From IMG/VR virus record IMGVR_UViG_3300027770_000025, positions 124,001-188,000 of that record: a stretch of DNA of 64,000 nucleotides, one strand, 5' to 3'. This document shows, piece by piece, positions 37,268 through 48,242 of the stretch (the stretch's first letter is position 1; each line of letters opens with the position of its first letter). A program made the position numbers and the translations under genes. The notes beneath the pieces are model-generated. The model ran no database searches. It was not told the origin of the DNA and saw only the letters and a program-made list of their open reading frames with translations.

Positions 37268-37945
37268 TTAATATTGGGTTCTCAGTAACTGTATAACGTC
37301 CCAAGCATCTTCTAAAGCATCGTGTGTAACTATACCTTCGATATTAGCCCTCTGTTTGCATTCATATAAAGAAGGGATTGCTTTATCATCAGTCCAATTT
37401 GTAAAGATCACTGATGGATCGATGATCCGCTGTCTGATCCTAATAACCTGCTGCCATCTGGGTAATCTCTCTAGGAAGTGCTTGTCGAACGAAGCAAAGT
37501 TTTTTCCTGCCACATTGATAGTAACAGGTTTCATCTTTGATGTTAACATTGGATAGCTTTTTCCGTTTTCCAATTTAACCATCTGGCTCTTAAATTTCTC
37601 CATATCAAATTCGACTACATCGTTATCATAAAGCCATCGATAGAATCCTTCTACAACCTGATCCTCCTGATAAAAGTGCATGCCGGTCATCTGAACTAGA
37701 TCGTTCTTTTCATCCTGATCTTTTGCTGTTTGATATTGCACAATAGCTTCAATAATCTTCTTGTTCATATTGAGAGCAAAAGGAGAACCTGTGATCTCGT
37801 TGTGCAGGATAGCTGCATGAAACTTAGGTATTTCTTCAAAACTAAGCTTCTTAGTTGTATCCTCTAGAATAGCACCGATTGAAAGAATCTGATAGCGATC
37901 CTTTTCTAATCCTGTCGTTTCGACATCGATTGAAATGTATATCAT
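37268..37945 (-). CDS. DEDDh 3'-5' exonuclease
   Basis: IDVETTGL, GKNFASFD, HDALEDA; start MIYISID at 37945. Confidence 0.88.
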   Translation of the reverse strand: MIYISIDVETTGLEKDRYQILSIGAILEDTTKKLSFEEIPKFHAAILHNEITGSPFALNMNKKIIEAIVQYQTAKDQDEKNDLVQMTGMHFYQEDQVVEGFYRWLYDNDVVEFDMEKFKSQMVKLENGKSYPMLTSKMKPVTINVAGKNFASFDKHFLERLPRWQQVIRIRQRIIDPSVIFTNWTDDKAIPSLYECKQRANIEGIVTHDALEDAWDVIQLLRTQY

Positions 37946-37978
37946 ATTATTTATAGGGATTTTTAATATTATTTGTTC

Positions 37979-38010
37979 CAAATGTATTATAAACTCCCGA
38001 GGAAAAAAAA
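37979..38010 (-). promoter_or_regulatory. Early promoter copy
   Basis: TTTTTTTTCCTCG-N11-TACATTTG; back-to-back with GATATATA on + at 38022-38029. Confidence 0.75.
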
Positions 38011-38046
38011 TAAAAGCGGGGGATATATAAAACAAAATTAAAAAAT

Positions 38047-38649
38047 ATGGCTTATAAAAGAGAGCAAATCGAAAAAGCGGTAAAAGAAAAAGGATACGTT
38101 TGGTTTGAAGGAGCCAAAGATTTTGATGTTAATATTGTTGGTATTAGAAATAATGCTCCCGCGATAGCAGATAAGGTAACTAATGTATTTGATGATTACA
38201 TAACGCTATCTTTTAAAGAAGCTGGGGTATGGAAATTTTATGAGTGGAATATTACCACAGATCCTGGAACAAAAGCTGTTAAAGAGTTTCACAATCCAAA
38301 TGGGGTTGCAAGAGTAGTACCTGGGCAATATCGGGGAATGTGGGCCGTTGGTTTACATCAGGGTAAATACGAAGCTATGCGTCAGGTTAAACCAGTTAAG
38401 GTTTACCGTGACAAGAATAAGGATATGACTTTTAATGAAACTGTTATCCAAGAGGGTATTTTTGGAATCAATGGACATAGATCTAATCCAACTACTGAGT
38501 CCGCTTATGTAGAAAATTGGTCGGAAGGATGTCAAGTATTCAAGAGGGTAAAGGATTTTAATGAATTTATGGGACTTATTAATAAAGCAAAGGCGATCCA
38601 CGGTAATCAATTTACCTACACACTAATAGAGTCAAATGACTTAATATAA
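38047..38649 (+). CDS. L,D-transpeptidase (YkuD)-like catalytic domain protein
   Basis: GINGHRS...WSEGCQV fits the H-x(n)-S-x-G-C motif; directly upstream of the endolysin. Confidence 0.6.
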   Translation: MAYKREQIEKAVKEKGYVWFEGAKDFDVNIVGIRNNAPAIADKVTNVFDDYITLSFKEAGVWKFYEWNITTDPGTKAVKEFHNPNGVARVVPGQYRGMWAVGLHQGKYEAMRQVKPVKVYRDKNKDMTFNETVIQEGIFGINGHRSNPTTESAYVENWSEGCQVFKRVKDFNEFMGLINKAKAIHGNQFTYTLIESNDLI

Positions 38650-38664
38650 AAAAAACCAAAAAAT

Positions 38665-39486
38665 ATGTTATTAAAAAACGGGTCTAAAGGGGAAGACGTT
38701 AAAAAACTCCAAGCAAAATTAGGTGCTACCGCAGACGGAAATTTTGGTCCAGGTACGGAAGCAAAAGTAAAAGCGTGGCAATCAGCTAATGGATTAGTAG
38801 CAGACGGCGTTGTAGGAGATGGAACTTGGGCTAAGATGTTTGGCTCTGCTCCAGTAGCAGCAGCTCCAGCAGCTATTCCAGCTTCATCTTTTAAATTGGA
38901 AGCTCTGAGAGGTCACATTCCTGATGCAGTTATTGCGCAAATCCCAGATACAGCAGCTAAATTTGGTATTACGAATACCCTAAGACTAGCTCACTTCTTA
39001 GCTCAGTGCGGTCACGAATCTGGTGGATTCAAAGCAGTTAATGAAAATCTTAACTACTCAGCTGATGGTCTTAAAAAGATCTTCCCTAAATACTTCCCTG
39101 GAAATTTAAACGAGTCTTATGCAAGACAGCCGGAGAAAATTGCTAATAAGGTGTACTCATCTAGAATGGGCAACGGAGACGAAGCATCTGGTGATGGATA
39201 TCGATATAAAGGTGCGGGTTTTATCCAATTAACAGGCAAAAGCAACTATGCTGCTTTTGATAAATTTGTTGATGATGACATATTAGCAAATCCCAATTTA
39301 GTTGCAACCAAATATCCATTAGCCTCTGCAGCATTCTTTTTTAATTCAAATAAGCTTTGGTCTATATGTGATAAAGGAGCTGATGATGCTACAGTGACTG
39401 CGGTTACGAAGCGTGTAAACGGTGGCACAATCGGGCTAGCTGATAGAATTAAACACTTTAAGGAATACTATAATCTACTTAAATAA
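38665..39486 (+). CDS. Endolysin: PG-binding domain + GH19 lysozyme
   Basis: GEDVKKLQ..DGNFGPGT; LAHFLAQCGHESGGF, ENLNYS, GFIQLTGKSNY, TKRVNGG. Confidence 0.92.
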   Translation: MLLKNGSKGEDVKKLQAKLGATADGNFGPGTEAKVKAWQSANGLVADGVVGDGTWAKMFGSAPVAAAPAAIPASSFKLEALRGHIPDAVIAQIPDTAAKFGITNTLRLAHFLAQCGHESGGFKAVNENLNYSADGLKKIFPKYFPGNLNESYARQPEKIANKVYSSRMGNGDEASGDGYRYKGAGFIQLTGKSNYAAFDKFVDDDILANPNLVATKYPLASAAFFFNSNKLWSICDKGADDATVTAVTKRVNGGTIGLADRIKHFKEYYNLLK

Positions 39487-39518
39487 GAATATATAAAGGG
39501 TAAAAATAAAAAAAATAT

Positions 39519-39860
39519 ATGAAAAACTTATTTTCTTCAATTAAAGAACACAGTAAAGGACTATGTTCCTGGGTAGCTGGCTTATTCAAAGATGAGTCTG
39601 GCCACCCATCATCCAAAAGATTTGTAGGCATAGTAGCTTCGCTTACTTTATGTATTACTATGTACCACAATAGCTATACTGCCGTGGACATTGCGCCAGC
39701 AGAATATCTTGTGAATGCTGTAGCACTTCTTGCATTTTCAACACTCGGACTTTCGTCTGTTGACAAATTTGTAAAGAGTAGAAAAGACATGCACATGGCT
39801 ACTAAAGCCAATGAAACCCCAGCAGAAACGACTGAAGAATCAACAGAAAACCCGTTATGA
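39519..39860 (+). CDS. Putative holin-like membrane protein (2 TM)
   Basis: SSKRF followed by two hydrophobic helices; follows the endolysin. Confidence 0.6.
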   Translation: MKNLFSSIKEHSKGLCSWVAGLFKDESGHPSSKRFVGIVASLTLCITMYHNSYTAVDIAPAEYLVNAVALLAFSTLGLSSVDKFVKSRKDMHMATKANETPAETTEESTENPL

Positions 39861-40162
39861 AAAAGTTTATTTTATTAGCAGCTTTTGCTTTAATCAGCAA
39901 TTTAGGAATCTCACAATGTTGTAAAGATTCTAAAAAAGTTAATCAACCTTGGGCATTAAGTACAAGTCTTGGCTATATCAACGTATCAAATACTACAATT
40001 GGACCAAGATACCAATCAAATGCATGGGGATCTCTTAACATTAGCTATAGTACAAATAGGTGGACTTTCGGTGCTTGGGCAGGAGCTAACTATTGGGTAA
40101 ATGGTAAACAGCCCGATCTTAGATTAGGAGTCACTACTACATACACAATAAAAAAATGGTAA
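39857..40162 (+). CDS. Small secreted beta-rich protein
   Basis: Signal peptide; alternating aromatic strands ending in W. Confidence 0.6.
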   Translation: MKKFILLAAFALISNLGISQCCKDSKKVNQPWALSTSLGYINVSNTTIGPRYQSNAWGSLNISYSTNRWTFGAWAGANYWVNGKQPDLRLGVTTTYTIKKW

Positions 40163-40167
40163 TATAA

Positions 40168-40524
40168 ATGAAAGATATAGGCATAACACTTAGTTTCTTA
40201 ATAAGTGGTCTTTTCGGTGCTATTCTAATGGTATCGAACAATGCACAGGGAAACTTAAAATCTGCTATGCTGTCAATCATCGGCGGAATGGCATCAGCTA
40301 ATTACCTAACCCCTGTTATGATCGAGATGCTGGGTCTTAAGGAAGCTAAATTACAGAATGGTTTAGCTTTTATTGTCGGATTTTTAGGGTTAAAATTAGT
40401 TGAGGTTCTTAGCAATAAATTTCTTAAGCAAGTTTCTCCTTCTGAGCAGGTTGTAAAAGAGCCAGTTAGAAGAAAGCCTGCGGCTAAGAAACCAGCAGTG
40501 AAGAAACCTGTGACAAAGAAATAG
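40168..40524 (+). CDS. Putative holin (3 TM, basic tail)
   Basis: Three hydrophobic segments; K/P-rich C-terminus. Confidence 0.65.
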   Translation: MKDIGITLSFLISGLFGAILMVSNNAQGNLKSAMLSIIGGMASANYLTPVMIEMLGLKEAKLQNGLAFIVGFLGLKLVEVLSNKFLKQVSPSEQVVKEPVRRKPAAKKPAVKKPVTKK

Positions 40525-40547
40525 CATAAAAGAATTAAAATATTAAT

Positions 40548-41252
40548 ATGAAAGAAATAATCGAAAAGATAAAATCAAAACTTTGGTTTATTACTATTCC
40601 AGTAGCAGCTTTAGTTTTGTTTTCAATGTCAGCATTGAAAGATATAGAAGCTTCCCATCAAGAATTAGAAACGGGAAAGAAATTAAGTTATTATTTAAGA
40701 ACTTCTACAGATAGCTTAACTTATCTTGCAATAGCTTATACATCAACTAAAGATCCAAAATTTTTAGATCAATTTAACGGCCATCTAGAACGTAGAAAAT
40801 ATAAACAAATTGATATTGATCCTGAATTTCAAATCTATTACAACGAAGGTCTTAGTTTAAGTAATGAATTAGCAACTAAGATTGAAGCTCCTGCATTTGA
40901 AAAGATGGACGATCAAGCTTTTTTCTCAAAAGAATATATCGATTACAAAACGAGGATAATCGCATCTATTGAAAAACTGAGAGAAGAGACATATAAGAAA
41001 TCTAATAATAAACTAAGTAGAGCTCTTTTAGAAATTAACATCTATATCTATTCGCTAATTCTTATCATTCTAGCATTCATCATTCTTATTAGATTTGAAT
41101 CTAAAGAAGAAGTTCAAGTAAAGAGAGTTACGAAGCCTAAAGCTAAAGCTAAATTAACACCTGTTAAAAAGGCACCTGTTAAAAAGGCACCTGTTAAAAA
41201 GGCACCTGTTAAAAAGGCACCTGTTAAAAAATCAACAAAAAATAAAATATGA
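40548..41252 (+). CDS. Two-TM protein with chemoreceptor-like periplasmic helical domain and KKAPV-repeat tail
   Basis: LRTSTDSLTYLAIAYTSTKDPKF..SNEL..IE..FSKEYIDYKTRI recalls MCP/HK sensor domains; no signalling domain follows. Confidence 0.55.
   Translation: MKEIIEKIKSKLWFITIPVAALVLFSMSALKDIEASHQELETGKKLSYYLRTSTDSLTYLAIAYTSTKDPKFLDQFNGHLERRKYKQIDIDPEFQIYYNEGLSLSNELATKIEAPAFEKMDDQAFFSKEYIDYKTRIIASIEKLREETYKKSNNKLSRALLEINIYIYSLILIILAFIILIRFESKEEVQVKRVTKPKAKAKLTPVKKAPVKKAPVKKAPVKKAPVKKSTKNKI
41158..41230 (+). repeat. 15-bp coding tandem repeat CACCTGTTAAAAAGG (KKAPV)
   Basis: Four perfect units plus a 13-nt partial. Confidence 0.95.
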
Positions 41253-42601
41253 AAAAAATAATAGGCCTATTAATTCTTTGTTCAGGAATTTTTGTTATTC
41301 TACACTCATGCGCAAAAGTGGAAAAGAAGATTACACCAGTTCAATTCCCCGATGTAGCAATTCAAAATTTTAGATTCCCCGAAGATTCAACAACTATTAA
41401 TGGGTGGTTATCTAAACAAGACACTACACAGATTGTAAGTCATGCATGGGGTATTTGGGCAGGTTTAACCGAGCCTACCGATCAAAAATATAACGGTCAA
41501 ACTTTATTAGTATTCGAAACATGGCTAGGCATACAGGAAATAGCAAATTCATCAAATAATAATACTTCTAAAATTAATAGAACTGCATTAAATGTACCAA
41601 AACAATTTATCCACGGTGCATTAAGAGACCCACAAGTTATAGACACTGCATTTCAAGTTCTAGAAACCGTATCATATGATCCTTTTGCGGCAAACTTTGC
41701 AATATCTAATCAACTGTTGACTGGCTCAAAATTAAGATCTTATGCAGTAACCGACGGGATTGGTTTTATACCGGATTTTCCCAACGCATCTATTGTAACT
41801 AAACCTACATACTATACGGGTGTACCTGATAAGAATAGTTTAATCAGAGTTCCTGTTTGGGTATCACCAGTTCCTGCTAAGGCGTTCAGATCGTCAGATT
41901 GGAAAACTTGGGTTTATGCTGATATTAACAATCGTCAAAAACCTAATAAGATTTTAGTTCCTGTAACTTCTTCAAACCCCTCTAAAAAACAGATTGAAGA
42001 TGCAACGTGCAATCTAAACGAATTTATTAACTACAAACTTGATGAAGAAGGTGCTGAGTATTTAAACCTACATGAGGATTTTAATAGTACCACTTATAAA
42101 GATGGTGATTATGTTTTATTGGTTGCTATGCACGTTGCGACTAAGGAGATTAAAAACTGGACATGGCAAACATATTTTTGGTGTCCTGATCCAACAAATC
42201 CTCCATCTCCAAGCTCAAAATTTGCAGCAAACTTAAAACCTAAAGAATTGAAAGGTGCAGCATCTCATTATGCAGTCAGTGTTGCTTATGCAATGGTTTG
42301 GCCAAATCAACCAATAACTGGGGGGAGTGATAAAAACACAAGACCTATCATAGCATTTAACCCATATTTAGAAGGAGGTTTTGGACCTGGAGTTTTTAAT
42401 CAGCCTAACACATATAAACCAGAATTTATTTATGGCATGCAAACGAATTGTATGTCTTGCCATGCATTAGCTACATATAAAGGTACAGTTGGCTATACAA
42501 CAGATCAATACATAGATATGAAAAATTCAAAACTATTCAAAAATGACATTCAATTAGATTTTCTTTGGTCAATTCAGGGAAACATGGATACGCTTAAATA
42601 A
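41249..42601 (+). CDS. Lipoprotein with a single CxxCH (c-type heme-binding) motif
   Basis: Lipobox-like ILHSC; MHVATKEIKNWTWQTYFW; TNCMSCH near the C-terminus. Confidence 0.65.
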   Translation: MKKIIGLLILCSGIFVILHSCAKVEKKITPVQFPDVAIQNFRFPEDSTTINGWLSKQDTTQIVSHAWGIWAGLTEPTDQKYNGQTLLVFETWLGIQEIANSSNNNTSKINRTALNVPKQFIHGALRDPQVIDTAFQVLETVSYDPFAANFAISNQLLTGSKLRSYAVTDGIGFIPDFPNASIVTKPTYYTGVPDKNSLIRVPVWVSPVPAKAFRSSDWKTWVYADINNRQKPNKILVPVTSSNPSKKQIEDATCNLNEFINYKLDEEGAEYLNLHEDFNSTTYKDGDYVLLVAMHVATKEIKNWTWQTYFWCPDPTNPPSPSSKFAANLKPKELKGAASHYAVSVAYAMVWPNQPITGGSDKNTRPIIAFNPYLEGGFGPGVFNQPNTYKPEFIYGMQTNCMSCHALATYKGTVGYTTDQYIDMKNSKLFKNDIQLDFLWSIQGNMDTLK

Positions 42602-42621
42602 AAATAAAATAAAAACAGATT

Positions 42622-42879
42622 ATGAACAACTACAATACATTAGGCACTATTATGCTATTTGCTGGAAATTTTGCACCACAAGGGTGGATGTACTGCAATG
42701 GCGCAACATTATCAATTCAGCAATACGAGGCACTATTCTCTATTCTTGGAATTACGTATGGAGGTGATGCTGAACAAGTCTTTAAATTGCCAAATCTTAT
42801 AGGACCGGCATCTACTGAGGTCTCTTTACCAATAAACTACATTATATGCGTAGAGGGAATTTTTCCAGCTAGACAGTAA
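42622..42879 (+). CDS. Standalone phage tail collar domain protein
   Basis: GTIMLFAGNFAPQGWMYCNG..LFSILGITYGGD..FKLPNL..NYIIC. Confidence 0.88.
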   Translation: MNNYNTLGTIMLFAGNFAPQGWMYCNGATLSIQQYEALFSILGITYGGDAEQVFKLPNLIGPASTEVSLPINYIICVEGIFPARQ

Positions 42880-42900
42880 TTAAAAAAAAATAAAGAAAAA

Positions 42901-43512
42901 ATGAACACTACAGAACAGAGATTACAAGAATTAACTAACATTGCCCCAACAGTATCCGTCAAAATGGATATGGAGTGGTTGGGTTCAACAACAAACACTG
43001 CGGATTTCCAAATTCGATTAACAAACACAGGTACATCAGTAGTTAAATTAAATGCTTTGATTATTCGTGGAATCCATTCACCTAAATTAACAACAGGAAC
43101 TATAACATGGAAAGCATTAAATGACAATACTGATCCGTCATGGTTAGGCTGGCCTAAAAAAGGAACAGATAACTTGCCTTATATTTCAGGTGCAAGAAAA
43201 TTAAATTTCTCTTCAGCAACAAATATCTTTACTAACGAAACTGCTCCTATTATACCAAAAGAAACAGGAGTAATAGCTGGGACTTTTAGAGTTTCTACAA
43301 CAACAACATGGAATCCAAATACTGATTTTGGTTTTGTATGGGAAATGACAACAGGTGGAGTTGTAGGTTACATAAATTTTGAAACGCAATCTTCAACTTC
43401 ATTACTACCAGTTGGTTTTATGCATTACGGACCAACAACATCTAATTCAATAGGTAAATGTTTAACTGTAACAGCACCAAGTGCACAGAAATTAAATGAA
43501 TTGAAAAAATAA
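42901..43512 (+). CDS. Hypothetical beta-rich protein
   Basis: Packed ORF, Thr/Gly-rich. Confidence 0.7.
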   Translation: MNTTEQRLQELTNIAPTVSVKMDMEWLGSTTNTADFQIRLTNTGTSVVKLNALIIRGIHSPKLTTGTITWKALNDNTDPSWLGWPKKGTDNLPYISGARKLNFSSATNIFTNETAPIIPKETGVIAGTFRVSTTTTWNPNTDFGFVWEMTTGGVVGYINFETQSSTSLLPVGFMHYGPTTSNSIGKCLTVTAPSAQKLNELKK

Positions 43513-43515
43513 ATT

Positions 43516-44514
43516 ATGAAAAAACACGCAAATGTTAAACAAAACCACACAGCAGAAACGCATTCAGACGAAACTTCAGGTGGTGCATCGATTGATACTA
43601 CAACAACTGCATCGGCAGGAGTAGAAACAGGAGATGAAAATGCATCAATTGGTATCGAAGTGTCTGCTAAAACTGGAACTGAAGCATCAGTTGATGGTGG
43701 ATTAGATGGAAATAATGTATATGTAGAAGCAAACTATTCAGATACAACCGAGGTTCATGTTACAGTAGAAGGCCAAGCTAATGCTGAAGGATTTGGAGTT
43801 GGCGGTTCTGTAGATGCTTATGCAAAAACAGGAAACGAAGCTAGCATTGAAGTGCGAGCAGGAGACGAAGGTGTAGTAGCAAATGGGAGTGTATCAGCAG
43901 GATCATCTGTTGGTGTTGACGGAGAAGGAACTGCTGATTTAAGAGAAGGTTCTGTTACAGCTGGTGCAGGTGTGTCAGTCGGAGAACAAGTTGGAATTGG
44001 TGGTGGAGGAGAAGCTACATATGTAGATGGCGTTGCAACTGTTGGTGTTAGTGGTGAAGTTGCAGTTTTACTTGGTGTTGATGTTGATTTAAGTGTAAGT
44101 GTTGATACAAACCAAATAGCAGAAGATGCTGCTGCTGCTCAAAAACTTGCTGAAGAACAAGCTGCTGAGGCAAAACGTTTATCTGATGAAGCTGATAGAG
44201 TATTAGCTGAACAAGCTGCTGCTGCACAAAAACTTGCTGAAGAGCAAGCTGCTGAAGCTAACAGAGTATTAGCTGAACAAGCTGCTGCTGCACAAAGAGA
44301 AACTGAAAGACAAGCAAAAGCTGCTCAGGAAGAATTTGATAGACAAGCAAGAGCTGCTCAAGAAGAATTTGATAGACAAGCAAGAGCTGCTCAAGAAGCT
44401 GCCGAAGCTGCACAAAGAGAAACAGAAAGGGTAGCTAGAGAAACTCAAGACGCTTTAAATCAAGCAGCAGAAGATGCTAAAAAATCAAAATGGAATCCTA
44501 AAAATTGGTTCTAA
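43516..44514 (+). CDS. G/V/A/S-rich beta region + repetitive coiled coil
   Basis: AGAGVSVGEQVG-type strands followed by AAAQKLAEEQAAEA and AAQEEFDRQAR repeats. Confidence 0.75.
   Translation: MKKHANVKQNHTAETHSDETSGGASIDTTTTASAGVETGDENASIGIEVSAKTGTEASVDGGLDGNNVYVEANYSDTTEVHVTVEGQANAEGFGVGGSVDAYAKTGNEASIEVRAGDEGVVANGSVSAGSSVGVDGEGTADLREGSVTAGAGVSVGEQVGIGGGGEATYVDGVATVGVSGEVAVLLGVDVDLSVSVDTNQIAEDAAAAQKLAEEQAAEAKRLSDEADRVLAEQAAAAQKLAEEQAAEANRVLAEQAAAAQRETERQAKAAQEEFDRQARAAQEEFDRQARAAQEAAEAAQRETERVARETQDALNQAAEDAKKSKWNPKNWF
44125..44430 (+). repeat. Imperfect coding repeats including a 33-bp unit (AAQEEFDRQAR)
   Basis: Recurrent GCTGCTCAAGAAGAATTTGATAGACAAGCAAGA and GAGTATTAGCTGAACAAGCTGCTGCTGCACAAA; boundaries approximate. 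Confidence 0.8.
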
Positions 44515-44689
44515 ATCAATGCTTTGTAGAAAAAACAAAAGTATGATATGATTAGAAAATATTCAAATTTCTAATCATTTAAGTAAAGAAATTAACCAGA
44601 GGGAAAGTAAAACAGGAAGTGTGAGTAAACCACTTCCTGAACTGGTACGATATAAGAATAGCGATATATAGTTCTAAAAACATCCCAAA

Positions 44690-45718
44690 TTGGCAACAGT
44701 CAGAACATTCGCATACAATTCAGGAACTGGTGTAACCGGAACAACACAGGTTGGCTATATAGCAGCAGGGGCAACCGCTGCTGACTATGGTGCAGGTATT
44801 ACCTGGTGGAAAGGACCGGACGAAGATCTAGGCTATGTTATATGTCACACATCAGAGGCTAGAACAGCAGGACGAAACGCATATGCTGTTGCAGCACCCA
44901 CTATAGGATTTTGGAGAAGCCCAGCAAAAACAGATTCTAGCTTTATTGATTTCTGTAATAGCGTATTCAAACAAAATTTCACAACCGCGATCGATGCAAG
45001 TACTTGGCTAACGATCAATGGGTATTGGAGTTCATATCCCGAATCTATATCATTAGTAATGAATCTGGATTCAACAACAGGGGTTACTGGTTCAAACTGG
45101 ACTGATATTTCAGGTGGGGGTCATAATGCAACATTAAATGGTGGGTATGGGACAACAACATATAACGGTAACCAAGTTGTTACCCTTAATGGAACGAGCG
45201 GTTATGTTTTACCATCCTCTTTTGGAACTCAATTAAATTCAACAGGATTTACATATAATGTTTGGGTTTATCCAACTACAACATCCAACGGAACAATAAT
45301 TGGCGAATGGGGAGGAACACCTCCGAATGGTTGGACAGATGCTCAAATTGCATTGGTTTCTGGAACTATAAGGGGCGGTGTATTTTCTCCGTCAGCTTTT
45401 TCACCAACAGGTTATATTACAGGGCAAACATTCTTCACAAACACTTGGTATAATATCGCAATGACATACAATCCAACAACTAAAGATCTTAAGTTGTATA
45501 TCAACGGAACATTGAATTCAACTATAAACGGGGTAAAATCAAATCCAGGTACATTGTATTTAACTTTGGGAAGACCCGATGGTGTATCAAGCTATTTAGG
45601 AGGTGCTTCGGGATATTTTCAAGGATATGTTGGATCTTGGAAAATATGGAATGGTCCAATATCTGCAACAAGCATTTTATCAAATTATAACTTAACCAAA
45701 TCAATATACGGATTATAA
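44690..45718 (+). CDS. LamG/concanavalin-A-like domain protein, probable virion appendage
   Basis: NWTDISGGGHNATL, TYNVWVYP, TWYNIAMTY, KLYINGTL, YFQGYVGSWKIWN; TTG start. Confidence 0.82.
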   Translation: MATVRTFAYNSGTGVTGTTQVGYIAAGATAADYGAGITWWKGPDEDLGYVICHTSEARTAGRNAYAVAAPTIGFWRSPAKTDSSFIDFCNSVFKQNFTTAIDASTWLTINGYWSSYPESISLVMNLDSTTGVTGSNWTDISGGGHNATLNGGYGTTTYNGNQVVTLNGTSGYVLPSSFGTQLNSTGFTYNVWVYPTTTSNGTIIGEWGGTPPNGWTDAQIALVSGTIRGGVFSPSAFSPTGYITGQTFFTNTWYNIAMTYNPTTKDLKLYINGTLNSTINGVKSNPGTLYLTLGRPDGVSSYLGGASGYFQGYVGSWKIWNGPISATSILSNYNLTKSIYGL

Positions 45719-45733
45719 AAAAAATAAATTAAT

Positions 45734-46033
45734 ATGGAAAAAAAAGAACCACAAAATACTCAAAGCCCAATGAATGGATTTGCTGATGCGTTTTTTTCAA
45801 AACTCAAAGAACAATCATTCACCATTATAGTTATGGTTGGTATAATTTGGTACCAAGGTAAAATGATGGAAGAGCGAGTAGCATATTGGCAAAAACTATA
45901 TGAAGACCAAAAAGCCTATATTGAACAAACGGTAAAAGAGGATAAAGCAATTATGCTAAACAGAATAAATTATCTACAGGATCAGAGAGATAAGTATGTC
46001 GAGGCTGCAATAGATGAATTAAAAATAAAATAA
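45734..46033 (+). CDS. Single-TM protein with coiled coil
   Basis: SFTIIVMVGIIWY followed by a helical tail. Confidence 0.65.
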   Translation: MEKKEPQNTQSPMNGFADAFFSKLKEQSFTIIVMVGIIWYQGKMMEERVAYWQKLYEDQKAYIEQTVKEDKAIMLNRINYLQDQRDKYVEAAIDELKIK

Positions 46034-46048
46034 AATACAGGATAAAAA

Positions 46049-46459
46049 ATGGAAACACCCTTCGTACCTAACCACCTACATTTAATTGTTAAGGGATATT
46101 TTAAAACTCCCCCTAGGGAAGAGAAAATCTTAAATGACTGGCTTAGAAGGCTAGTTGAAAAAGTAAGAATGGTGGTTGTCGCCGGACCCTCGTCCATTTA
46201 TGTTGATGAACCAGGAAATGAAGGGATTACAGGAACAGTTACCCTAGCAACTTCACACGCTGCTATTCACGTTTGGGATCGCGCTGTTCCTGCAATGTTT
46301 CAATTTGATATCTACTCCTGCTCAGAGTTCACCGCAGAGGAGGTTTTAGAGCATCTAGATGAGTTTGGTCTTATTTCATGTGAATACATTCGGATTGACA
46401 GAAACGGAGAAAGCATGACAGTTATAGAGCAAAAGAAGATAGGATATACAGCATCTTAA
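46049..46459 (+). CDS. speD: Pyruvoyl-dependent AdoMet decarboxylase-family proenzyme
   Basis: HLHLIV, GITGTVTLATSHAAIHVW, FDIYSC. Confidence 0.8.
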   Translation: METPFVPNHLHLIVKGYFKTPPREEKILNDWLRRLVEKVRMVVVAGPSSIYVDEPGNEGITGTVTLATSHAAIHVWDRAVPAMFQFDIYSCSEFTAEEVLEHLDEFGLISCEYIRIDRNGESMTVIEQKKIGYTAS

Positions 46460-46463
46460 CGAA

Positions 46464-46504
46464 ACAAAAAAAGCCTAGTAATTTATTTTACTAGGCTTTT
46501 TTGT
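46464..46504. terminator. Bidirectional terminator
   Basis: A7-GCCTAGTAA/TTACTAGGC-T6 between convergent genes. Confidence 0.85.
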
Positions 46505-46519
46505 GGATTGTTAAGTCTA

Positions 46520-46804
46520 TTATACTAATAAAAATTCGTTAATCATTTTGGCGATTTTTTCTTTGGAGTGATTGCCAGATACCTTTGAAGCTTCCTCTCC
46601 GTCTTTTAAAAAAATAAGTGTCGGAATTCCTCTAATGTTATACTTTTGTGTGAGTTCAGGCTCGTTGTCAACGTTCACCTTTTTAATCTCAACATTAGAA
46701 CCCTCCACATTATATTCAGCCATTAGTGACTCGATTGCTGGCCCCATTGATTTGCAGGGCTCGCACCATTCAGCGTAAAAATCTAATACTTTTACCTTTG
46801 CCAT
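46520..46804 (-). CDS. trxA: Thioredoxin
   Basis: DFYAEWCEPCK, IRGIPTL. Confidence 0.92.
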   Translation of the reverse strand: MAKVKVLDFYAEWCEPCKSMGPAIESLMAEYNVEGSNVEIKKVNVDNEPELTQKYNIRGIPTLIFLKDGEEASKVSGNHSKEKIAKMINEFLLV

Positions 46805-46811
46805 TTTTTAT

Positions 46812-48242
46812 TTATCGTTTATATTTCCTTGCTAATTCCTGTGCATGATTCAAGTCCCTAACACCAAATTTCTGGGATTGCTGCAAATACCCATCAGCAA
46901 ATGATCTAGGCTTATTTAAAGCCATTGAATTCCATCCATTATAATTTGTACTGTATTTCCAAATCTGGTCTGTAGTTGCTATAGATCCATTAGGTCTTTC
47001 CGTGTATAAATAACCACCTACATTACCTCCTGTTCGATCTGCTCCATGAGCGCAGTGTACTAATGTGTTACCACTTTTAATAATTTCATTTACCTTGTCC
47101 TGATCTCTAGTAGATGAAAGCTTATAGAATTTACATCCTAGCTGTTTACATAATGCTTCCTCTTCTGCGATTGAAACAGATTGATCTTTTCTTTGATGTC
47201 TTCCATCCTTTCCATCCCCGTTAAATCGTATAACATTCTTTATTCCGTATTTAGGGTACATCTGTTTCATTACCTCGAGAGGAAATTGTGCACTTCTGTA
47301 ATTTGTTCCCTTTCCGTCAGGAATCAAATGAAAATTATACTCTCTAGAAATAGCTGCATCATCCTGTTCTGGATTAGTCCCCACCACAGCAGGAGTAAAT
47401 ATTATATTGTTATTAGGTATCGGAGATTGGTTATTAACTATCTGAGATGTATTATTGGCATCTGCGCCAGATTTCTTAGGAGCATTCTTAGACCTCATGT
47501 TTGGGTTTTCGCTATCCAATGTGTCAATGGAAATCTGATAAGCTGGATTAAAATCTGCTCCAGTTAGCTCATACCATCTTGATTGACTATCTTTTTTAGC
47601 TAACCAATGATCGCCTTCTACCTTATATTTATAAGGATCCTTCGGTCTAGAAATAATTTGACTCGCTGTAGAGTTTCCTTTACTTAGATCTGTTGGTGGA
47701 ATGTATCCAGATTGGTTTGTTACCAACCCGTCAATTTCCTTTGCTATAGTATCATATACAGGTAGATTAACATGGGGGTTTGTTACTTTCCCGATTGGTG
47801 GTTCAATAACGGTAACGCCTTCACCTTTAAATCTGTCATAGTATTGCTTAACCTTATCAGTGGTTACTGATACATTTCCGCCCCAACCCCATGATCCCTG
47901 AACAACAGACAATTTTGCCTGCGGAAAAACTCTTCTTAATTCAGAAACTAGACCTTTGATGTCGTCATTGGGGCTAAATCCCCCATTCGTTCCGATGTTT
48001 ATTACAACATCTTTAACTTTAGTGTCAACTGGATGCTTAGAAACAGCCCCATTCAGCCATTTAACGCCCATTCCACTTTTCCATAAGTTTTCTTCCGATC
48101 CAGTAGTTCCTAACATTGTAAGGGTCTTGGATCTCCTGAATATGTTTGGAGTACAAGAATCACCTATTACGATGCTTGTCCCATCACTTTTAGACTCGTT
48201 TAAACTTATAAAAGATTTAAAATCATGTATTCTATTTTTCAT
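46812..48242 (-). CDS. Multidomain probable virion protein: SGNH-like + linker module + Cys-based (CX5R) phosphatase
   Basis: MKNRIHDFKSFISLNE; IGDS and IGTNG blocks; VHCAHGADRTG; GATATATA 4 nt upstream. Confidence 0.75.
   Translation of the reverse strand: MKNRIHDFKSFISLNESKSDGTSIVIGDSCTPNIFRRSKTLTMLGTTGSEENLWKSGMGVKWLNGAVSKHPVDTKVKDVVINIGTNGGFSPNDDIKGLVSELRRVFPQAKLSVVQGSWGWGGNVSVTTDKVKQYYDRFKGEGVTVIEPPIGKVTNPHVNLPVYDTIAKEIDGLVTNQSGYIPPTDLSKGNSTASQIISRPKDPYKYKVEGDHWLAKKDSQSRWYELTGADFNPAYQISIDTLDSENPNMRSKNAPKKSGADANNTSQIVNNQSPIPNNNIIFTPAVVGTNPEQDDAAISREYNFHLIPDGKGTNYRSAQFPLEVMKQMYPKYGIKNVIRFNGDGKDGRHQRKDQSVSIAEEEALCKQLGCKFYKLSSTRDQDKVNEIIKSGNTLVHCAHGADRTGGNVGGYLYTERPNGSIATTDQIWKYSTNYNGWNSMALNKPRSFADGYLQQSQKFGVRDLNHAQELARKYKR

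What the first reader, a model, noticed from the sequence alone, without database searches (positions are those of the whole stretch)
40548..42601. Orphan chemoreceptor-like sensor domain translationally coupled to a CxxCH lipoprotein
Seen: a 2-TM protein whose periplasmic part recalls MCP/histidine-kinase helical sensors but whose cytoplasmic part is only a KKAPV-repeat basic tail. It overlaps by 4 nt with a 450-aa lipoprotein carrying one CMSCH. The upstream holin-like gene also ends in a K/P/A/V tail. Established: CxxCH is the c-type heme attachment motif for exported proteins. Inference: a phage envelope module that senses or sequesters a ligand or redox cue, possibly tuning lysis timing; alternatively, captured host genes.
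Basis: partly seen in the sequence, partly recalled or inferred. Interest (0 to 1): 0.6.

Follow-up and report, generated by a model that had tools for sequence, protein, structure and literature searches.

The report
Holin-partner sensor module beside captured haem lipoprotein
Two neighbouring genes of a freshwater jumbo phage are not one unit: one is a stand-alone sensor-shaped membrane protein that always travels with a holin, and so probably helps time host lysis, and the other is a haem lipoprotein gene that the phages took once from Flavobacterium-like hosts.

Summary
The proposed two-gene module is not.

**The 234-aa protein (40548-41252).** It has two transmembrane helices, and its periplasmic part is predicted to fold as a four-helix bundle like those of histidine-kinase and chemoreceptor sensors. 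There is no output domain. Its conserved partner is the upstream holin:
- It lies directly beside a holin homologue in every one of the 29 viral loci that held both genes.
- It lies directly beside the holin in 47 of 76 holin-centred loci, in both gene orders.
- It is never followed by the haem gene in any other locus.

I read it as a holin-coupled lysis regulator of the antiholin type. This is an inference.

**The 450-aa protein (41249-42601).** It belongs to a sparsely distributed family, mostly from Bacteroidota.
- The lipobox cysteine is invariant in a 30-sequence alignment, and all 88 distinct homologues examined carry a C-terminal CxxCH.
- The predicted fold matches cytochrome P460 / c'-beta.
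- The phage copies form one clade among Flavobacteriaceae sequences.
- In bacteria, and in this phage, the gene travels with tail-collar-domain genes.
- In some bacteria it lies in frame behind a flavin amine oxidase.

The 4-nt overlap between the two genes is found only in this phage. Both proteins are uncharacterised and worth testing separately.

The parts
38047..38649 (+). Endolysin-type gene (200 aa)
   Evidence: phrog_3000 E 4e-35 and phrog_33083 'endolysin' E 4e-15. It travels with the membrane cassette in related phages.
38665..39486 (+). Endolysin (273 aa): PG_binding_1 plus a glycoside hydrolase 19-like domain
   Evidence: PF01471 E 1e-13 and PF00182 E 2e-6; phrog_181 endolysin E 3e-68.
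39519..39860 (+). Small membrane protein (113 aa). First gene of the four-gene membrane cassette; holin-like, unverified.
   Evidence: One strong hydrophobic segment, residues 63-81. Homologues sit in the same cassette in related phages. No family hit.
39857..40162 (+). Small exported protein (101 aa) with an N-terminal signal, a Cys-Cys after it, and a C-terminal aromatic residue. Candidate outer-membrane component of the lysis cassette.
   Evidence: Hydrophobic N-terminus, residues 4-22. Weak DUF6808 hit below cut-off. Conserved in the cassette in related phages.
40168..40524 (+). Holin (118 aa) with a basic K/P-rich cytoplasmic tail. The conserved partner of the 234-aa gene.
   Evidence: phrog_2359 holin E 1.4e-12. 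Alignment A3. Directly adjacent to the 234-aa family in 47 of 76 holin loci.
40548..41252 (+). The 234-aa gene ('tm234'): a stand-alone 2-TM protein with a periplasmic four-helix bundle and no transmitter domain.
   Evidence: ORF. AF2 model pLDDT 77 with helices 2-67, 70-85, 92-119 and 128-182. Fold matches to NarQ, Tar, Tsr, PcaY and histidine-kinase sensor domains. 147 homologues in the word search, none carrying an organism name. Only 37 hits in 1.84 billion representatives.
40581..40637 (+). TM1 of tm234 (residues 12-30)
   Evidence: Hydropathy 2.14. Continuous with helix 1 of the bundle in the model.
40638..41033 (+). Periplasmic four-helix-bundle domain of tm234 (residues 31-162)
   Evidence: 52 of the 57 invariant columns of A4 lie here. 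VIA Z 9.8-11.6 to periplasmic sensor domains, which fill 10 of the top 11 rows.
41034..41090 (+). TM2 of tm234 (residues 163-181)
   Evidence: Hydropathy 2.81.
41091..41249 (+). Basic cytoplasmic tail of tm234 (residues 182-234). Predicted disordered.
   Evidence: K+R 20 against D+E 3. pLDDT below 50. Length varies from 0 to about 50 residues among homologues.
41158..41230 (+). Perfect 15-bp tandem repeat (4.9 copies) that encodes the KKAPV units
   Evidence: TRF: 100% matches, score 146. Copy number differs among 88-95% identical relatives.
41249..42601 (+). The 450-aa gene ('CYT450'): an exported lipoprotein with one C-terminal CxxCH on a cytochrome P460 / c'-beta-like core.
   Evidence: phrog_19967 E 1e-27. 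1111 homologues. AF2 pLDDT 86, pTM 0.87. The top five of 48,161 chains are all P460 / c'-beta, Z 5.9-7.2. Tree.
41309..41311 (+). Lipobox cysteine (Cys21) of CYT450
   Evidence: ILHSC. Invariant in A1.
42449..42463 (+). Haem-attachment motif CMSCH (residues 401-405)
   Evidence: Translation. C401, C404 and H405 are invariant. Present in 88 of 88 homologues.
42622..42879 (+). Minimal tail-collar-domain protein (85 aa). The gene that travels with CYT450 in bacteria and in this phage lineage.
   Evidence: PF07484 E 1.6e-25. A Collar gene lies within four genes downstream of CYT450, and directly after it in most cases, in 20 bacterial loci and in L087.

Best explanation
The interval holds two functionally separate genes that abut only in this phage.

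**(1) tm234 is the last gene of the phage's lysis membrane cassette.**
- It sits in the inner membrane with both ends in the cytoplasm.
- It exposes a strongly conserved four-helix bundle of the kind used as the input module of histidine kinases and chemoreceptors. There is no kinase or signalling domain behind it, only a basic disordered tail.
- Its gene stays glued to one family of holin genes, usually by an ATGA overlap, and remains adjacent even where the gene order is inverted.

The most likely role is a holin partner that sets or gates the time of hole formation, in the manner of an antiholin. On this reading the periplasmic bundle is the part that binds something: a small ligand, an envelope component, or the holin's periplasmic loop. 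Shown: topology, predicted fold, conservation pattern, gene linkage. Inferred: binding to the holin, and any effect on lysis timing.

**(2) CYT450 is a gene captured from the host.** It is an exported lipoprotein of a patchily distributed family, mostly from Bacteroidota.
- One c-type haem would be attached at the invariant C-terminal CxxCH by the host's CcsBA system.
- The core fold is that of cytochrome P460 / c'-beta, enlarged by long insertions.
- That fold, the many invariant polar residues, and the bacterial companions point to a periplasmic redox or small-ligand enzyme rather than a simple electron carrier. The companions are a HisKA_3/LuxR two-component system, tail-collar paralogues, a 2OG-Fe(II) oxygenase and, in some species, a flavin amine oxidase in the same reading frame. 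Candidate substrates are N-oxides (NO, hydroxylamine) or peroxide.
- Jumbo phages acquired it once and keep all family-invariant residues, so it probably works as an auxiliary gene during infection.

Shown: motif invariance, export signal, predicted fold match, phylogeny, neighbourhoods. Inferred: haem attachment, coordination state, chemistry, and benefit to the phage.
For: **tm234**
- Two TM segments, with the positive charge at both ends.
- AF2 model with TM1 continuous with helix 1 and helix 4 continuous with TM2.
- Foldseek ranks the NarQ sensor+TM fragment, the Adeh_2942 histidine-kinase sensor, PcaY, Tsr and Tar first, at probability about 1.
- In VIA-align, 10 of the top 11 of 48,161 chains are periplasmic histidine-kinase or chemoreceptor sensor domains, Z 9.8-11.6.
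- The ESM Atlas nearest named clusters are CHASE3 and a viral 4HB_MCP_1 cluster.
- A profile search of 1.84 billion proteins finds a small family. Beyond it there are only weak hits (E 2e-7 to 6e-4) to the N-terminal regions of proteins that Pfam shows to be histidine kinases and MCPs.
- Linkage, tm234-centred: the homologue lies directly downstream of the holin in all 29 viral loci that held both genes. A 4-nt overlap is called in 27, and in the other two the longest-ORF start exaggerates the overlap.
- Linkage, holin-centred: of 76 holin loci, 31 have tm234 at +1 and 16 at -1 with gaps of 0-3 nt.
- Antiholin genes are typically adjacent to or overlapping holin genes (PMC7182436).

**CYT450**
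- Invariant C21, C401, C404 and H405. CxxCH in 88 of 88 homologues.
- Model pLDDT 86.
- The top five structural matches are all cytochrome c'-beta or P460. The next row has Z 4.1.
- hhalign places the C-terminal GGFG...CxxCH block in register with GGWGF...CxxCH of P460, probability 51-62%.
- An ESM Atlas neighbour cluster carries PF16694.
- Atlas structural relatives in Myxococcota carry class I cytochrome c domains.
- The phage rows form one clade (SH-aLRT 95) inside a 99-supported group whose other members are Flavobacteriaceae or unclassified Bacteroidota.
- Found in 5 of 151 sampled Flavobacterium genomes.
- CcsBA-type assembly protein in four CYT-bearing Bacteroidota genomes, none in the phage.
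- Neighbours and the amine-oxidase frame.
Against: **tm234**
- No Pfam or NCBIfam sensor family is hit.
- hhalign against home-made 4HB_MCP_1 and CHASE3 alignments gives probability below 1%.
- Helical bundles match each other easily, and Z below about 13 is not decisive for them.
- The weak hits to kinases and MCPs could be driven partly by the TM-plus-helix composition.
- TM1 and TM2 are poorly conserved, which fits badly with an intramembrane contact to the holin.
- 29 of 76 holin loci lack tm234 and carry other small membrane proteins instead, so the holin does not need it.
- No antiholin of this architecture is known to me.

**CYT450**
- PF16694 does not hit it.
- Whole-length hhalign probability is only 16-26%.
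- Z 6-7 is within the range that unrelated models sometimes reach (note).
- The protein is about three times the size of P460.
- A nearly invariant Met 19 residues after the CxxCH could be a sixth ligand, which would make it an ordinary electron-transfer cytochrome.
- No expression or haem data exist. RNA-library contigs are short and do not prove transcription.
Confidence: 0.65

Rival explanations
1. The sensor-like protein and the haem lipoprotein form one translationally coupled envelope module. The haem protein captures a redox or ligand cue and passes it to the sensor-like protein to tune lysis.
For: A 4-nt ATGA overlap in this phage. Both products face the periplasm. In bacteria the haem gene often sits next to a two-component system, so a signalling context for the haem family is not absurd.
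Against: The pair occurs only here. None of 30 other tm234 loci has the haem gene, and none of the other viral haem loci has tm234. The closest relative has endolysin, then the haem gene, then the Collar gene, with no membrane cassette. The bacterial kinases beside the haem gene are HisKA_3 proteins with multi-TM partners that BLAST does not relate to tm234.
Confidence: 0.04
2. tm234 is a structural lysis component without any sensing role. It could be a second holin subunit or co-holin, or an inner-membrane anchor that works with the small exported protein (39857-40162) to breach the outer membrane, as a spanin analogue.
For: It lies in a cassette with endolysins, a holin and a small exported protein. 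In holin lineages without tm234, the neighbouring slot holds small membrane proteins of 93-123 aa. Helical periplasmic domains are typical of i-spanins (own knowledge).
Against: A second TM followed by a strongly basic tail puts the C-terminus back in the cytoplasm. Known i-spanins need a free periplasmic C-terminus (own knowledge). The best fold matches are sensor bundles rather than coiled-coil hairpins. Conservation is concentrated in the periplasmic bundle, as expected for a binding domain.
Confidence: 0.22
3. tm234 is a decoy. As an output-less copy of a host sensor, it forms dead heterodimers with a host histidine kinase or receptor and silences a host envelope response during infection.
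For: Four-helix-bundle sensors act as dimers (own knowledge). The protein lacks any transmitter. There are weak sequence links to the sensor regions of real kinases and MCPs.
Against: No close bacterial homologue exists in 1.84 billion representatives, so no host protein could be mimicked closely. The fixed linkage to a holin, in two gene orders, is not explained by this model.
Confidence: 0.05
4. CYT450 is an ordinary six-coordinate (His/Met) electron-transfer cytochrome, or a haem-independent surface lipoprotein that the phage uses to mask a receptor or exclude superinfection. It is not a P460-like small-ligand enzyme.
For: A nearly invariant Met lies 19 residues after the CxxCH. PF16694 is not hit. 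Sequence-level links to P460 are weak. Phage-encoded lipoproteins that block receptors are well known (own knowledge). The neighbours are tail-collar (receptor-binding type) genes.
Against: The five best structural matches are all P460 / c'-beta, with a clear gap to the next row. About 70 invariant residues across 46-93% identity argue for an active site, not a mere anchor. The CxxCH is kept in all 88 homologues, including all phage copies. The reading frame shared with a flavin amine oxidase argues for redox chemistry.
Confidence: 0.25

Closest known systems
Periplasmic four-helix-bundle sensor modules of histidine kinases and chemoreceptors (NarQ/NarX, Tar/Tsr, PcaY; Pfam 4HB_MCP_1 and CHASE3)
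   Same: N-in 2-TM topology. A periplasmic domain of about 130 aa, predicted as an antiparallel four-helix bundle with helix 1 continuing TM1 and helix 4 continuing into TM2.
   Different: No HAMP, kinase or MCP signalling domain, only a basic disordered tail. Not detected by the Pfam models or by hhalign. The gene is tied to a phage holin rather than to a signalling pathway.
Antiholins next to their holins: T4 RI with holin T (PMC11413866, PMC8385771) and ICP1 ArrA with TeaA (PMC7182436)
   Same: A membrane-tethered protein with a periplasmic domain, encoded next to or overlapping the holin gene. In T4 the periplasmic domain is thought to sense a periplasmic cue and to hold the holin inactive.
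   Different: RI has one N-terminal signal or anchor and a small domain, and it acts on the large periplasmic domain of holin T. Here the partner has two TMs and a sensor-type bundle, and the holin is a small multi-TM protein with short loops. No functional data exist for tm234.
Cytochrome P460 and cytochrome c'-beta (PF16694; PDB 2je3, 6hiu, 6amg, 7s5o, 8brk)
   Same: A mainly beta-sheet core with a single haem c attached at a CxxCH close to the C-terminus. A glycine-rich GGxGF-like block lies about 22 residues before the motif.
   Different: About 450 aa instead of 135-200, through long insertions. Lipid-anchored. No hit to the Pfam model. The lysine-haem cross-link and the coordination state are unknown. 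The family is mostly from Bacteroidota and their phages.
Phage auxiliary ('moron') genes captured from hosts
   Same: A single phage clade nested among host-family sequences. Variable position in phage genomes. All family-invariant residues retained.
   Different: I found no report of a haem c lipoprotein of this fold as a phage auxiliary gene. PHROGs lists the family (phrog_19967) as of unknown function.

Membership tests
4HB sensor modules (Pfam 4HB_MCP_1 PF12729 / CHASE3 PF05227) | Two TM helices flanking a periplasmic domain of about 130-150 aa, N-in and C-in | tested here: met
   TM 12-30 and 163-181. The loop is 132 aa. The basic residues lie at both ends.
4HB sensor modules (Pfam 4HB_MCP_1 PF12729 / CHASE3 PF05227) | Antiparallel four-helix bundle continuous with the TM helices | tested here: met
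   AF2 helices 2-67, 70-85, 92-119 and 128-182. NarQ sensor+TM fragment TM-score 0.67, rmsd 3.7. Z 9.8-11.6 to ten sensor domains. This is a predicted model, and helical bundles match easily.
4HB sensor modules (Pfam 4HB_MCP_1 PF12729 / CHASE3 PF05227) | Match to the family profile | tested here: not met
   No Pfam hit at E 0.1. hhalign probability below 1% against alignments built from genomic PF12729 and PF05227 matches. Only weak library-wide hits (E 2e-7 to 6e-4) to sensor regions of kinases and MCPs.
4HB sensor modules (Pfam 4HB_MCP_1 PF12729 / CHASE3 PF05227) | Cytoplasmic transmitter (HAMP with MCP signalling domain, or HisKA with HATPase) | tested here: not met
   After TM2 there are only 53 basic, disordered residues.
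Antiholin / holin partner | Gene adjacent to or overlapping the holin gene | tested here: met
   All 29 tm234-centred loci that held both genes, and 47 of 76 holin-centred loci, in both orders, mostly with an ATGA overlap or a 0-3 nt gap. In the window itself the gap is 23 nt.
Antiholin / holin partner | Physical binding to the holin and a delay of lysis | not testable with these tools
   The complex prediction returned 'no answer', which is no evidence either way. Co-expression and lysis curves are needed.
Two-component spanin (i-spanin) | A single N-terminal TM with a free periplasmic C-terminus that meets an outer-membrane lipoprotein | tested here: not met
   A second strong TM (hydropathy 2.81) and a basic tail return the C-terminus to the cytoplasm.
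c-type cytochrome | CxxCH motif in an exported protein | tested here: met
   CMSCH at 401-405, present in 88 of 88 homologues. Lipoprotein signal with invariant Cys21.
c-type cytochrome | A maturation system available in the cell | tested here: met
   PF01578 proteins of 831-1085 aa in four CYT-bearing Bacteroidota genomes; none in the phage record. The true host of this phage is inferred, not known.
c-type cytochrome | Covalently bound haem | not testable with these tools
   Needs haem staining, a pyridine haemochrome spectrum or mass spectrometry.
Cytochrome P460 / c'-beta (PF16694) | Beta-sheet core fold with a C-terminal CxxCH | tested here: met
   The top five of 48,161 chains are 8brk, 6hiu, 2je3, 7s5o and 6amg. 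Z is 5.9-7.2 with 124-142 residues aligned, covering nearly the whole chains. The next row is Z 4.1. The Z values are moderate and the model is a prediction.
Cytochrome P460 / c'-beta (PF16694) | Match to the family profile | tested here: inconclusive
   No Pfam hit. hhalign gives 16-26% for the whole length and 51-62% for the C-terminal block in the correct register. A neighbouring Atlas cluster carries PF16694 in 12% of its members.
Cytochrome P460 / c'-beta (PF16694) | Lysine-haem cross-link (P460) or five-coordinate haem (both) | not testable with these tools
   No residue-level structural alignment or spectra are available. An invariant Lys185 exists, but its position relative to the haem was not determined.
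Holin (phrog_2359), for the upstream gene 40168-40524 | Small multi-TM protein with a charged C-terminal tail in a lysis cassette | tested here: met
   phrog_2359 E 1.4e-12. Hydrophobic segments and a tail with 12 K+R. Endolysins lie upstream. Hole formation itself was not tested.

The most novel reading that the evidence does not exclude
tm234 founds a new class of antiholin. It would be an output-less four-helix-bundle sensor wired directly to a holin, so that freshwater Flavobacterium phages open or hold the lysis hole according to a chemical or envelope cue read in the periplasm. That would be signal-gated lysis without any phosphorelay. Separately, CYT450 would be the first phage-borne member of an enlarged, lipid-anchored branch of the cytochrome P460 superfamily that handles N-oxides or peroxide in the infected cell's periplasm.
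Probability: 0.3. Interest if true: 0.8.

Novelty: new variant of a known kind. Interest (0 to 1): 0.55.

Why it matters
- **Lysis timing.** It sets phage burst size and fitness. Outside T4, ICP1 and a few other phages, the proteins that adjust it are unknown, and nothing is known for phages of Bacteroidota. A sensor-type periplasmic module held next to a holin through an inversion of gene order is a concrete, easily tested candidate for environment-dependent lysis control. Lysis curves with and without the gene, and ligand screens on a 132-aa soluble domain, would test it.
- **The haem protein.** It defines an uncharacterised, enlarged branch of the cytochrome P460 / c'-beta fold in Bacteroidota. 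It has informative companions: a two-component system, tail-collar paralogues, a 2OG oxygenase, and a flavin amine oxidase in the same frame. It also has a single transfer into jumbo phages. This widens the known range of that fold and of phage auxiliary genes.
- **A caution.** An ATGA overlap in one genome is not evidence of a functional pair.

Tried and rejected
- **Complex prediction** of tm234 (1-188) with the holin (1-92): 'no answer', score 0.00. This is not evidence either way.
- **BLAST against GenBank phages.** megablast of the 8-kb region, and tblastn of CYT450, tm234 and the holin, found no match. No cultured relative is available.
- **Family scans.** Pfam and NCBIfam name neither protein. 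The NCBIfam hits of the tm234 tail (Rv3852 family, histone H1-like) reflect K/P/A composition only.
- **PDB searches for CYT450.** A profile search of PDB sequences with A1 found nothing meaningful. Foldseek against PDB had no row at E <= 0.001. The exhaustive VIA search was needed to bring P460 to the top.
- **PF16694 in six CYT-bearing genomes.** No match, so the Pfam model does not see this family.
- **hhalign of tm234** against 4HB_MCP_1 and CHASE3 alignments: below 1%. Loci L160 and L165 come from an unpublished genome (G045).
- **Promoter and terminator scan** of 37800-46600. No + strand terminator inside the co-directional block, and promoter-like sites are fewer than in shuffles. It is uninformative for Bacteroidota-type promoters.
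- **Literature.** No paper links cytochrome P460 to phages. Nothing useful was found on tail-collar / MdpB proteins of Bacteroidota.
- **Sequencing runs.**
  - The stretch is held in freshwater, lake and river metagenomes of at least 11 studies.
  - Contigs from four metatranscriptome libraries cover short pieces of the cassette. Two pieces are 100% identical, in genes 39519-39860 and 40168-40524.
  - Pieces about 93% identical cover CYT450.
  - DNA carry-over cannot be excluded, and contigs cannot show a transcript.
- **Spanin reading of tm234:** rejected on topology.
- **Tree.** Identical sequences were collapsed. The window's own duplicate locus L001 and fragments with under 300 aligned residues (such as L075, L084, L086, L109) were left out. 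The root on Alcanivorax is a choice, no test_one_clade was run, and the bacteria-to-phage direction is an inference.


Full report
**Setting**

The window is bases 124001-188000 of a 348.6-kb viral record that CheckV rates as complete, so this is a jumbo phage.

Genes 38047-46459 form one co-directional block on the + strand, in this order:
- two endolysin-type genes (PG_binding_1 with GH19, phrog_181; phrog_3000/33083);
- a four-gene membrane cassette: a 113-aa membrane protein, a 101-aa exported protein, a 118-aa holin of phrog_2359, and the 234-aa protein;
- the 450-aa protein;
- an 85-aa tail-collar-domain protein;
- further genes, including a Laminin_G_3 protein and an AdoMet-decarboxylase-like gene.

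The same stretch is held in freshwater, lake and river metagenomes of many studies. No GenBank phage matches it.

**Observation check**

- The two ORFs overlap in ATGA at 41249-41252.
- The 234-aa protein (tm234) has hydrophobic segments at residues 12-30 and 163-181, a 132-aa loop, and a tail with 20 K+R against 3 D+E.
- The KKAPV units are encoded by a perfect 15-bp repeat of 4.9 copies at 41158-41230. The repeat is therefore recent. Its copy number differs among relatives that are 88-95% identical, and more distant homologues have short K/P-rich tails or none.
- The 450-aa protein (CYT450) begins with a signal ending ILHSC and has one CMSCH at 401-405.
- The upstream holin ends in a similar basic tail.

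**The two genes are not a unit**

- The word search for tm234 finds 147 proteins, none carrying an organism name.
- The search for CYT450 finds 1111, many on bacterial chromosomes of 3-4 Mb.
- In 30 viral loci fetched with the tm234 alignment, none has a CYT450 homologue next to it.
- In the viral loci fetched with the CYT450 alignment, none has tm234.
- In the closest relative (L087, CYT450 93-94% identical) the order is endolysin, CYT450, 85-aa Collar. The membrane cassette is absent from that position.
- In other phage lineages CYT450 sits after a thymidylate synthase and small unknown genes. There it is overlapped by 4 nt by an unrelated 82-88-aa gene.

The ATGA overlap is therefore the ordinary tight packing of a phage genome.

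**What tm234 is**

*Fold.*
- The AlphaFold model (pLDDT 77; tail below 50) is a four-helix bundle. Its first helix continues from TM1 and its last runs into TM2.
- Foldseek's best PDB rows are the NarQ sensor-plus-TM fragment (TM-score 0.67 by target, rmsd 3.7 A), a histidine-kinase periplasmic domain, and the PcaY, Tsr and Tar ligand-binding domains. All have probability near 1 but E-values of only 0.02-0.2.
- The exhaustive VIA search puts ten periplasmic kinase or chemoreceptor sensor domains among the top eleven of 48,161 chains, Z 9.8-11.6. For helical bundles such Z values are suggestive, not decisive.
- The language-model search gives viral clusters first, then CHASE3 and a viral 4HB_MCP_1 cluster.

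*Sequence.*
- The family is not a member of those Pfam families: there is no Pfam hit, and hhalign gives below 1%.
- A profile search of 1.84 billion representatives finds only 37 proteins at E <= 0.001.
- Beyond the family itself, these are weak hits to the N-terminal regions of proteins that Pfam identifies as histidine kinases (HisKA_2 or HisKA with HATPase, some with HAMP, PAS and REC) and as MCPs.

There is a faint sequence trace, but no family membership and no output domain.

*Conserved partner.*
- In all 29 tm234-centred loci that held both genes, the holin homologue is immediately upstream. A 4-nt overlap is called in 27. In the other two my longest-ORF start exaggerates the overlap.
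- From the holin side, 76 loci had a callable holin. Of these, 31 have tm234 at +1 and 16 have it at -1 with gaps of 0-3 nt.
- Adjacency has thus survived an inversion of gene order.
- The remaining 29 loci have more distant holins with other small membrane proteins of 93-123 aa beside them.

*Conservation pattern.*
- Conservation in tm234 is concentrated in the periplasmic bundle: 52 of 57 invariant columns. The TM helices and the tail vary.
- The holin's invariant residues include an ANYLTP motif in its central segment.

*Interpretation.*
- Antiholin genes are typically adjacent to or overlapping holin genes (PMC7182436).
- T4 RI is a periplasmic antiholin that is thought to sense a periplasmic signal (PMC8385771, PMC11413866).
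- I therefore take tm234 to be a holin partner that modulates hole formation, with the bundle as its binding part.
- This step is inferred. The complex prediction gave no answer.
- An i-spanin role is unlikely, because the C-terminus returns to the cytoplasm.

**What CYT450 is**

*Conservation and fold.*
- Thirty homologues down to 46% identity share about 70 invariant residues, including the lipobox Cys, C401, C404 and H405.
- All 88 distinct homologues from bacterial and viral loci keep a C-terminal CxxCH.
- The model is confident: pLDDT 86, pTM 0.87.
- Foldseek finds nothing significant, but its most probable rows include cytochrome P460 and c'-beta.
- In the exhaustive VIA search the five best of 48,161 chains are all of that one superfamily: Thermus c'-beta, Methylococcus and Nitrosomonas P460, and Nitrosomonas c'-beta. 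Z is 5.9-7.2 with 124-142 residues aligned, which is nearly the whole of each chain. The alignments are spread over residues 30-450 of the model, and the next row is Z 4.1.
- The core is thus a P460-type sheet with long insertions.

*Sequence support is weak but consistent.*
- hhalign aligns the C-terminal block in register (GGFG, about 22 residues, CxxCH, against GGWGF, about 22 residues, CxxCH) at 51-62% probability.
- The whole length reaches only 16-26%.
- The Pfam model does not hit.
- A neighbouring Atlas cluster of 416-aa proteobacterial proteins carries PF16694 in 12% of its members.
- Structural relatives in Myxococcota carry class I cytochrome c domains.
- Four CYT-bearing Bacteroidota genomes encode a CcsBA-type assembly protein, and the phage does not.

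**Origin and company of CYT450**

*Distribution and phylogeny.*
- The family is spread over Flavobacteriaceae, Reichenbachiella, Saprospiraceae, Chitinophagaceae and Sphingobacteriaceae, with outliers in Alcanivorax, Balneolota and Lentisphaerota.
- It is sparse: 5 of 151 sampled Flavobacterium genomes have it.
- In a maximum-likelihood tree of 88 rows the ten phage rows form one group (SH-aLRT 95). That group lies within a 99-supported set whose other members are Flavobacteriaceae or unclassified Bacteroidota.
- This fits one capture from a Flavobacterium-like host. The direction of transfer is inferred from the breadth of the bacterial distribution.

*Bacterial neighbourhoods.* About 20 of roughly 80 bacterial loci show a recurring cluster:
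- a multi-TM protein, a HisKA_3 kinase and a LuxR-type regulator;
- then CYT450;
- then one to three tail-collar-domain proteins of about 180 aa;
- often a PKHD-type 2OG-Fe(II) oxygenase as well, and sometimes a formyltransferase and a periplasmic-binding-protein-like gene.

The phage keeps the collar link, with an 85-aa minimal collar gene directly downstream, here and in L087.

*Amine oxidase.*
- In seven loci from four lineages, CYT450 lies in one open frame of 1,256-1,272 aa behind a flavin amine oxidase and a jacalin-like region. It still carries its hydrophobic segment and lipobox in the middle.
- In one further locus the oxidase is a separate gene directly upstream.

Together these point to a periplasmic redox enzyme acting on a small nitrogen- or oxygen-containing ligand. 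The chemistry itself is not shown.

**Verdict**

It is wrong in its core, the two-gene module.

What is there is (a) a holin-coupled, output-less sensor-type membrane protein restricted to uncultured phages, and (b) an enlarged, lipid-anchored P460-fold haem protein taken from the host. Each is a new variant of a known kind and can be tested with simple experiments.

Noticed in passing
L209-L224 (viral contigs), e.g. L215:2365-3297: In one phage lineage the tm234 homologue lies directly upstream of the holin (gap 0-3 nt) instead of downstream. The pair was kept through an inversion of order. There the gene after the holin is an 80-aa coiled-coil protein with a C-terminal TM.
   Followed up: partly
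L232-L265 (viral contigs), e.g. L243:2914-3628: More distant holins of the same family are overlapped at their 3' end by a 114-123-aa membrane protein with an N-terminal TM, or by a 93-97-aa protein with 2-3 TMs. The slot beside this holin is filled by different small membrane proteins in different lineages.
   Followed up: partly
window 39857-40162: A 101-aa exported protein with Cys-Cys after the signal and a C-terminal Trp is conserved in the lysis membrane cassette of related phages. It is a candidate outer-membrane disruptor. There is only a weak DUF6808 hit, below cut-off.
   Followed up: no
L015, L016, L017, L018, L022, L023, L061 (bacterial loci); L060: CYT450 homologues lie in one open frame of 1,256-1,272 aa behind a flavin amine oxidase (PF01593) and a jacalin-like region. 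They keep an internal hydrophobic segment and lipobox. In L060 the oxidase is a separate 777-aa gene just upstream. Whether one polypeptide is made is unknown.
   Followed up: partly
L017:769-12181, L031:3205-10771 and about 20 other bacterial loci: A recurring Bacteroidota cluster: a multi-TM protein, a HisKA_3 kinase, a LuxR regulator, CYT450, one to three tail-collar-domain proteins, a PKHD-type 2OG-Fe(II) oxygenase, and sometimes a formyltransferase and a periplasmic-binding-protein-like gene. I found no described function for it.
   Followed up: partly
window 42622-42879: The phage collar protein (85 aa) matches the bacterial 180-aa collar proteins at both ends: the N-terminal collar domain and a C-terminal INYIICV-type motif. 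It lacks their central part of about 100 aa.
   Followed up: no
L087:5140-7616 (viral contig, CYT450 93-94% identical): In the closest relative the four membrane genes are missing between the endolysin and CYT450. One metatranscriptome-library contig (X16, record 9) joins 39561-39828 to 42656-42744 with 150 other letters between them. It therefore comes from a relative that lacks all four genes from 39857 to 42601. The region is a mosaic.
   Followed up: partly
window 46049-46459 and 46520-46804: An AdoMet-decarboxylase-like gene (PF02675, E 3e-10) and a thioredoxin (PF00085, E 2e-25) flank the convergent junction. A strong bidirectional hairpin lies at 46467-46502.
   Followed up: no
window 46812-48242 (- strand): A 476-aa protein without any Pfam hit. 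Its C-terminal part contains HCAHGADRTG, which reads like a Cys-based phosphatase signature (HCx5R). That is my own reading and is not tested.
   Followed up: no
window 43516-44514: A 332-aa protein whose second half consists of repeated A/E/Q-rich units (AEQAAAAQ..., FDRQARAAQEE...). There is only a weak hit to a tape-measure PHROG. Homologues follow tm234 in many related phages.
   Followed up: no
L005:7382-7921, L088:7395-7958, L097:7371-7928: In other phage lineages the gene after CYT450 is a 2H-phosphoesterase-like protein of 179-187 aa. It has weak hits to Acb1 (anti-CBASS) and the 2'-5' RNA ligase family, all below the Pfam cut-offs.
   Followed up: no
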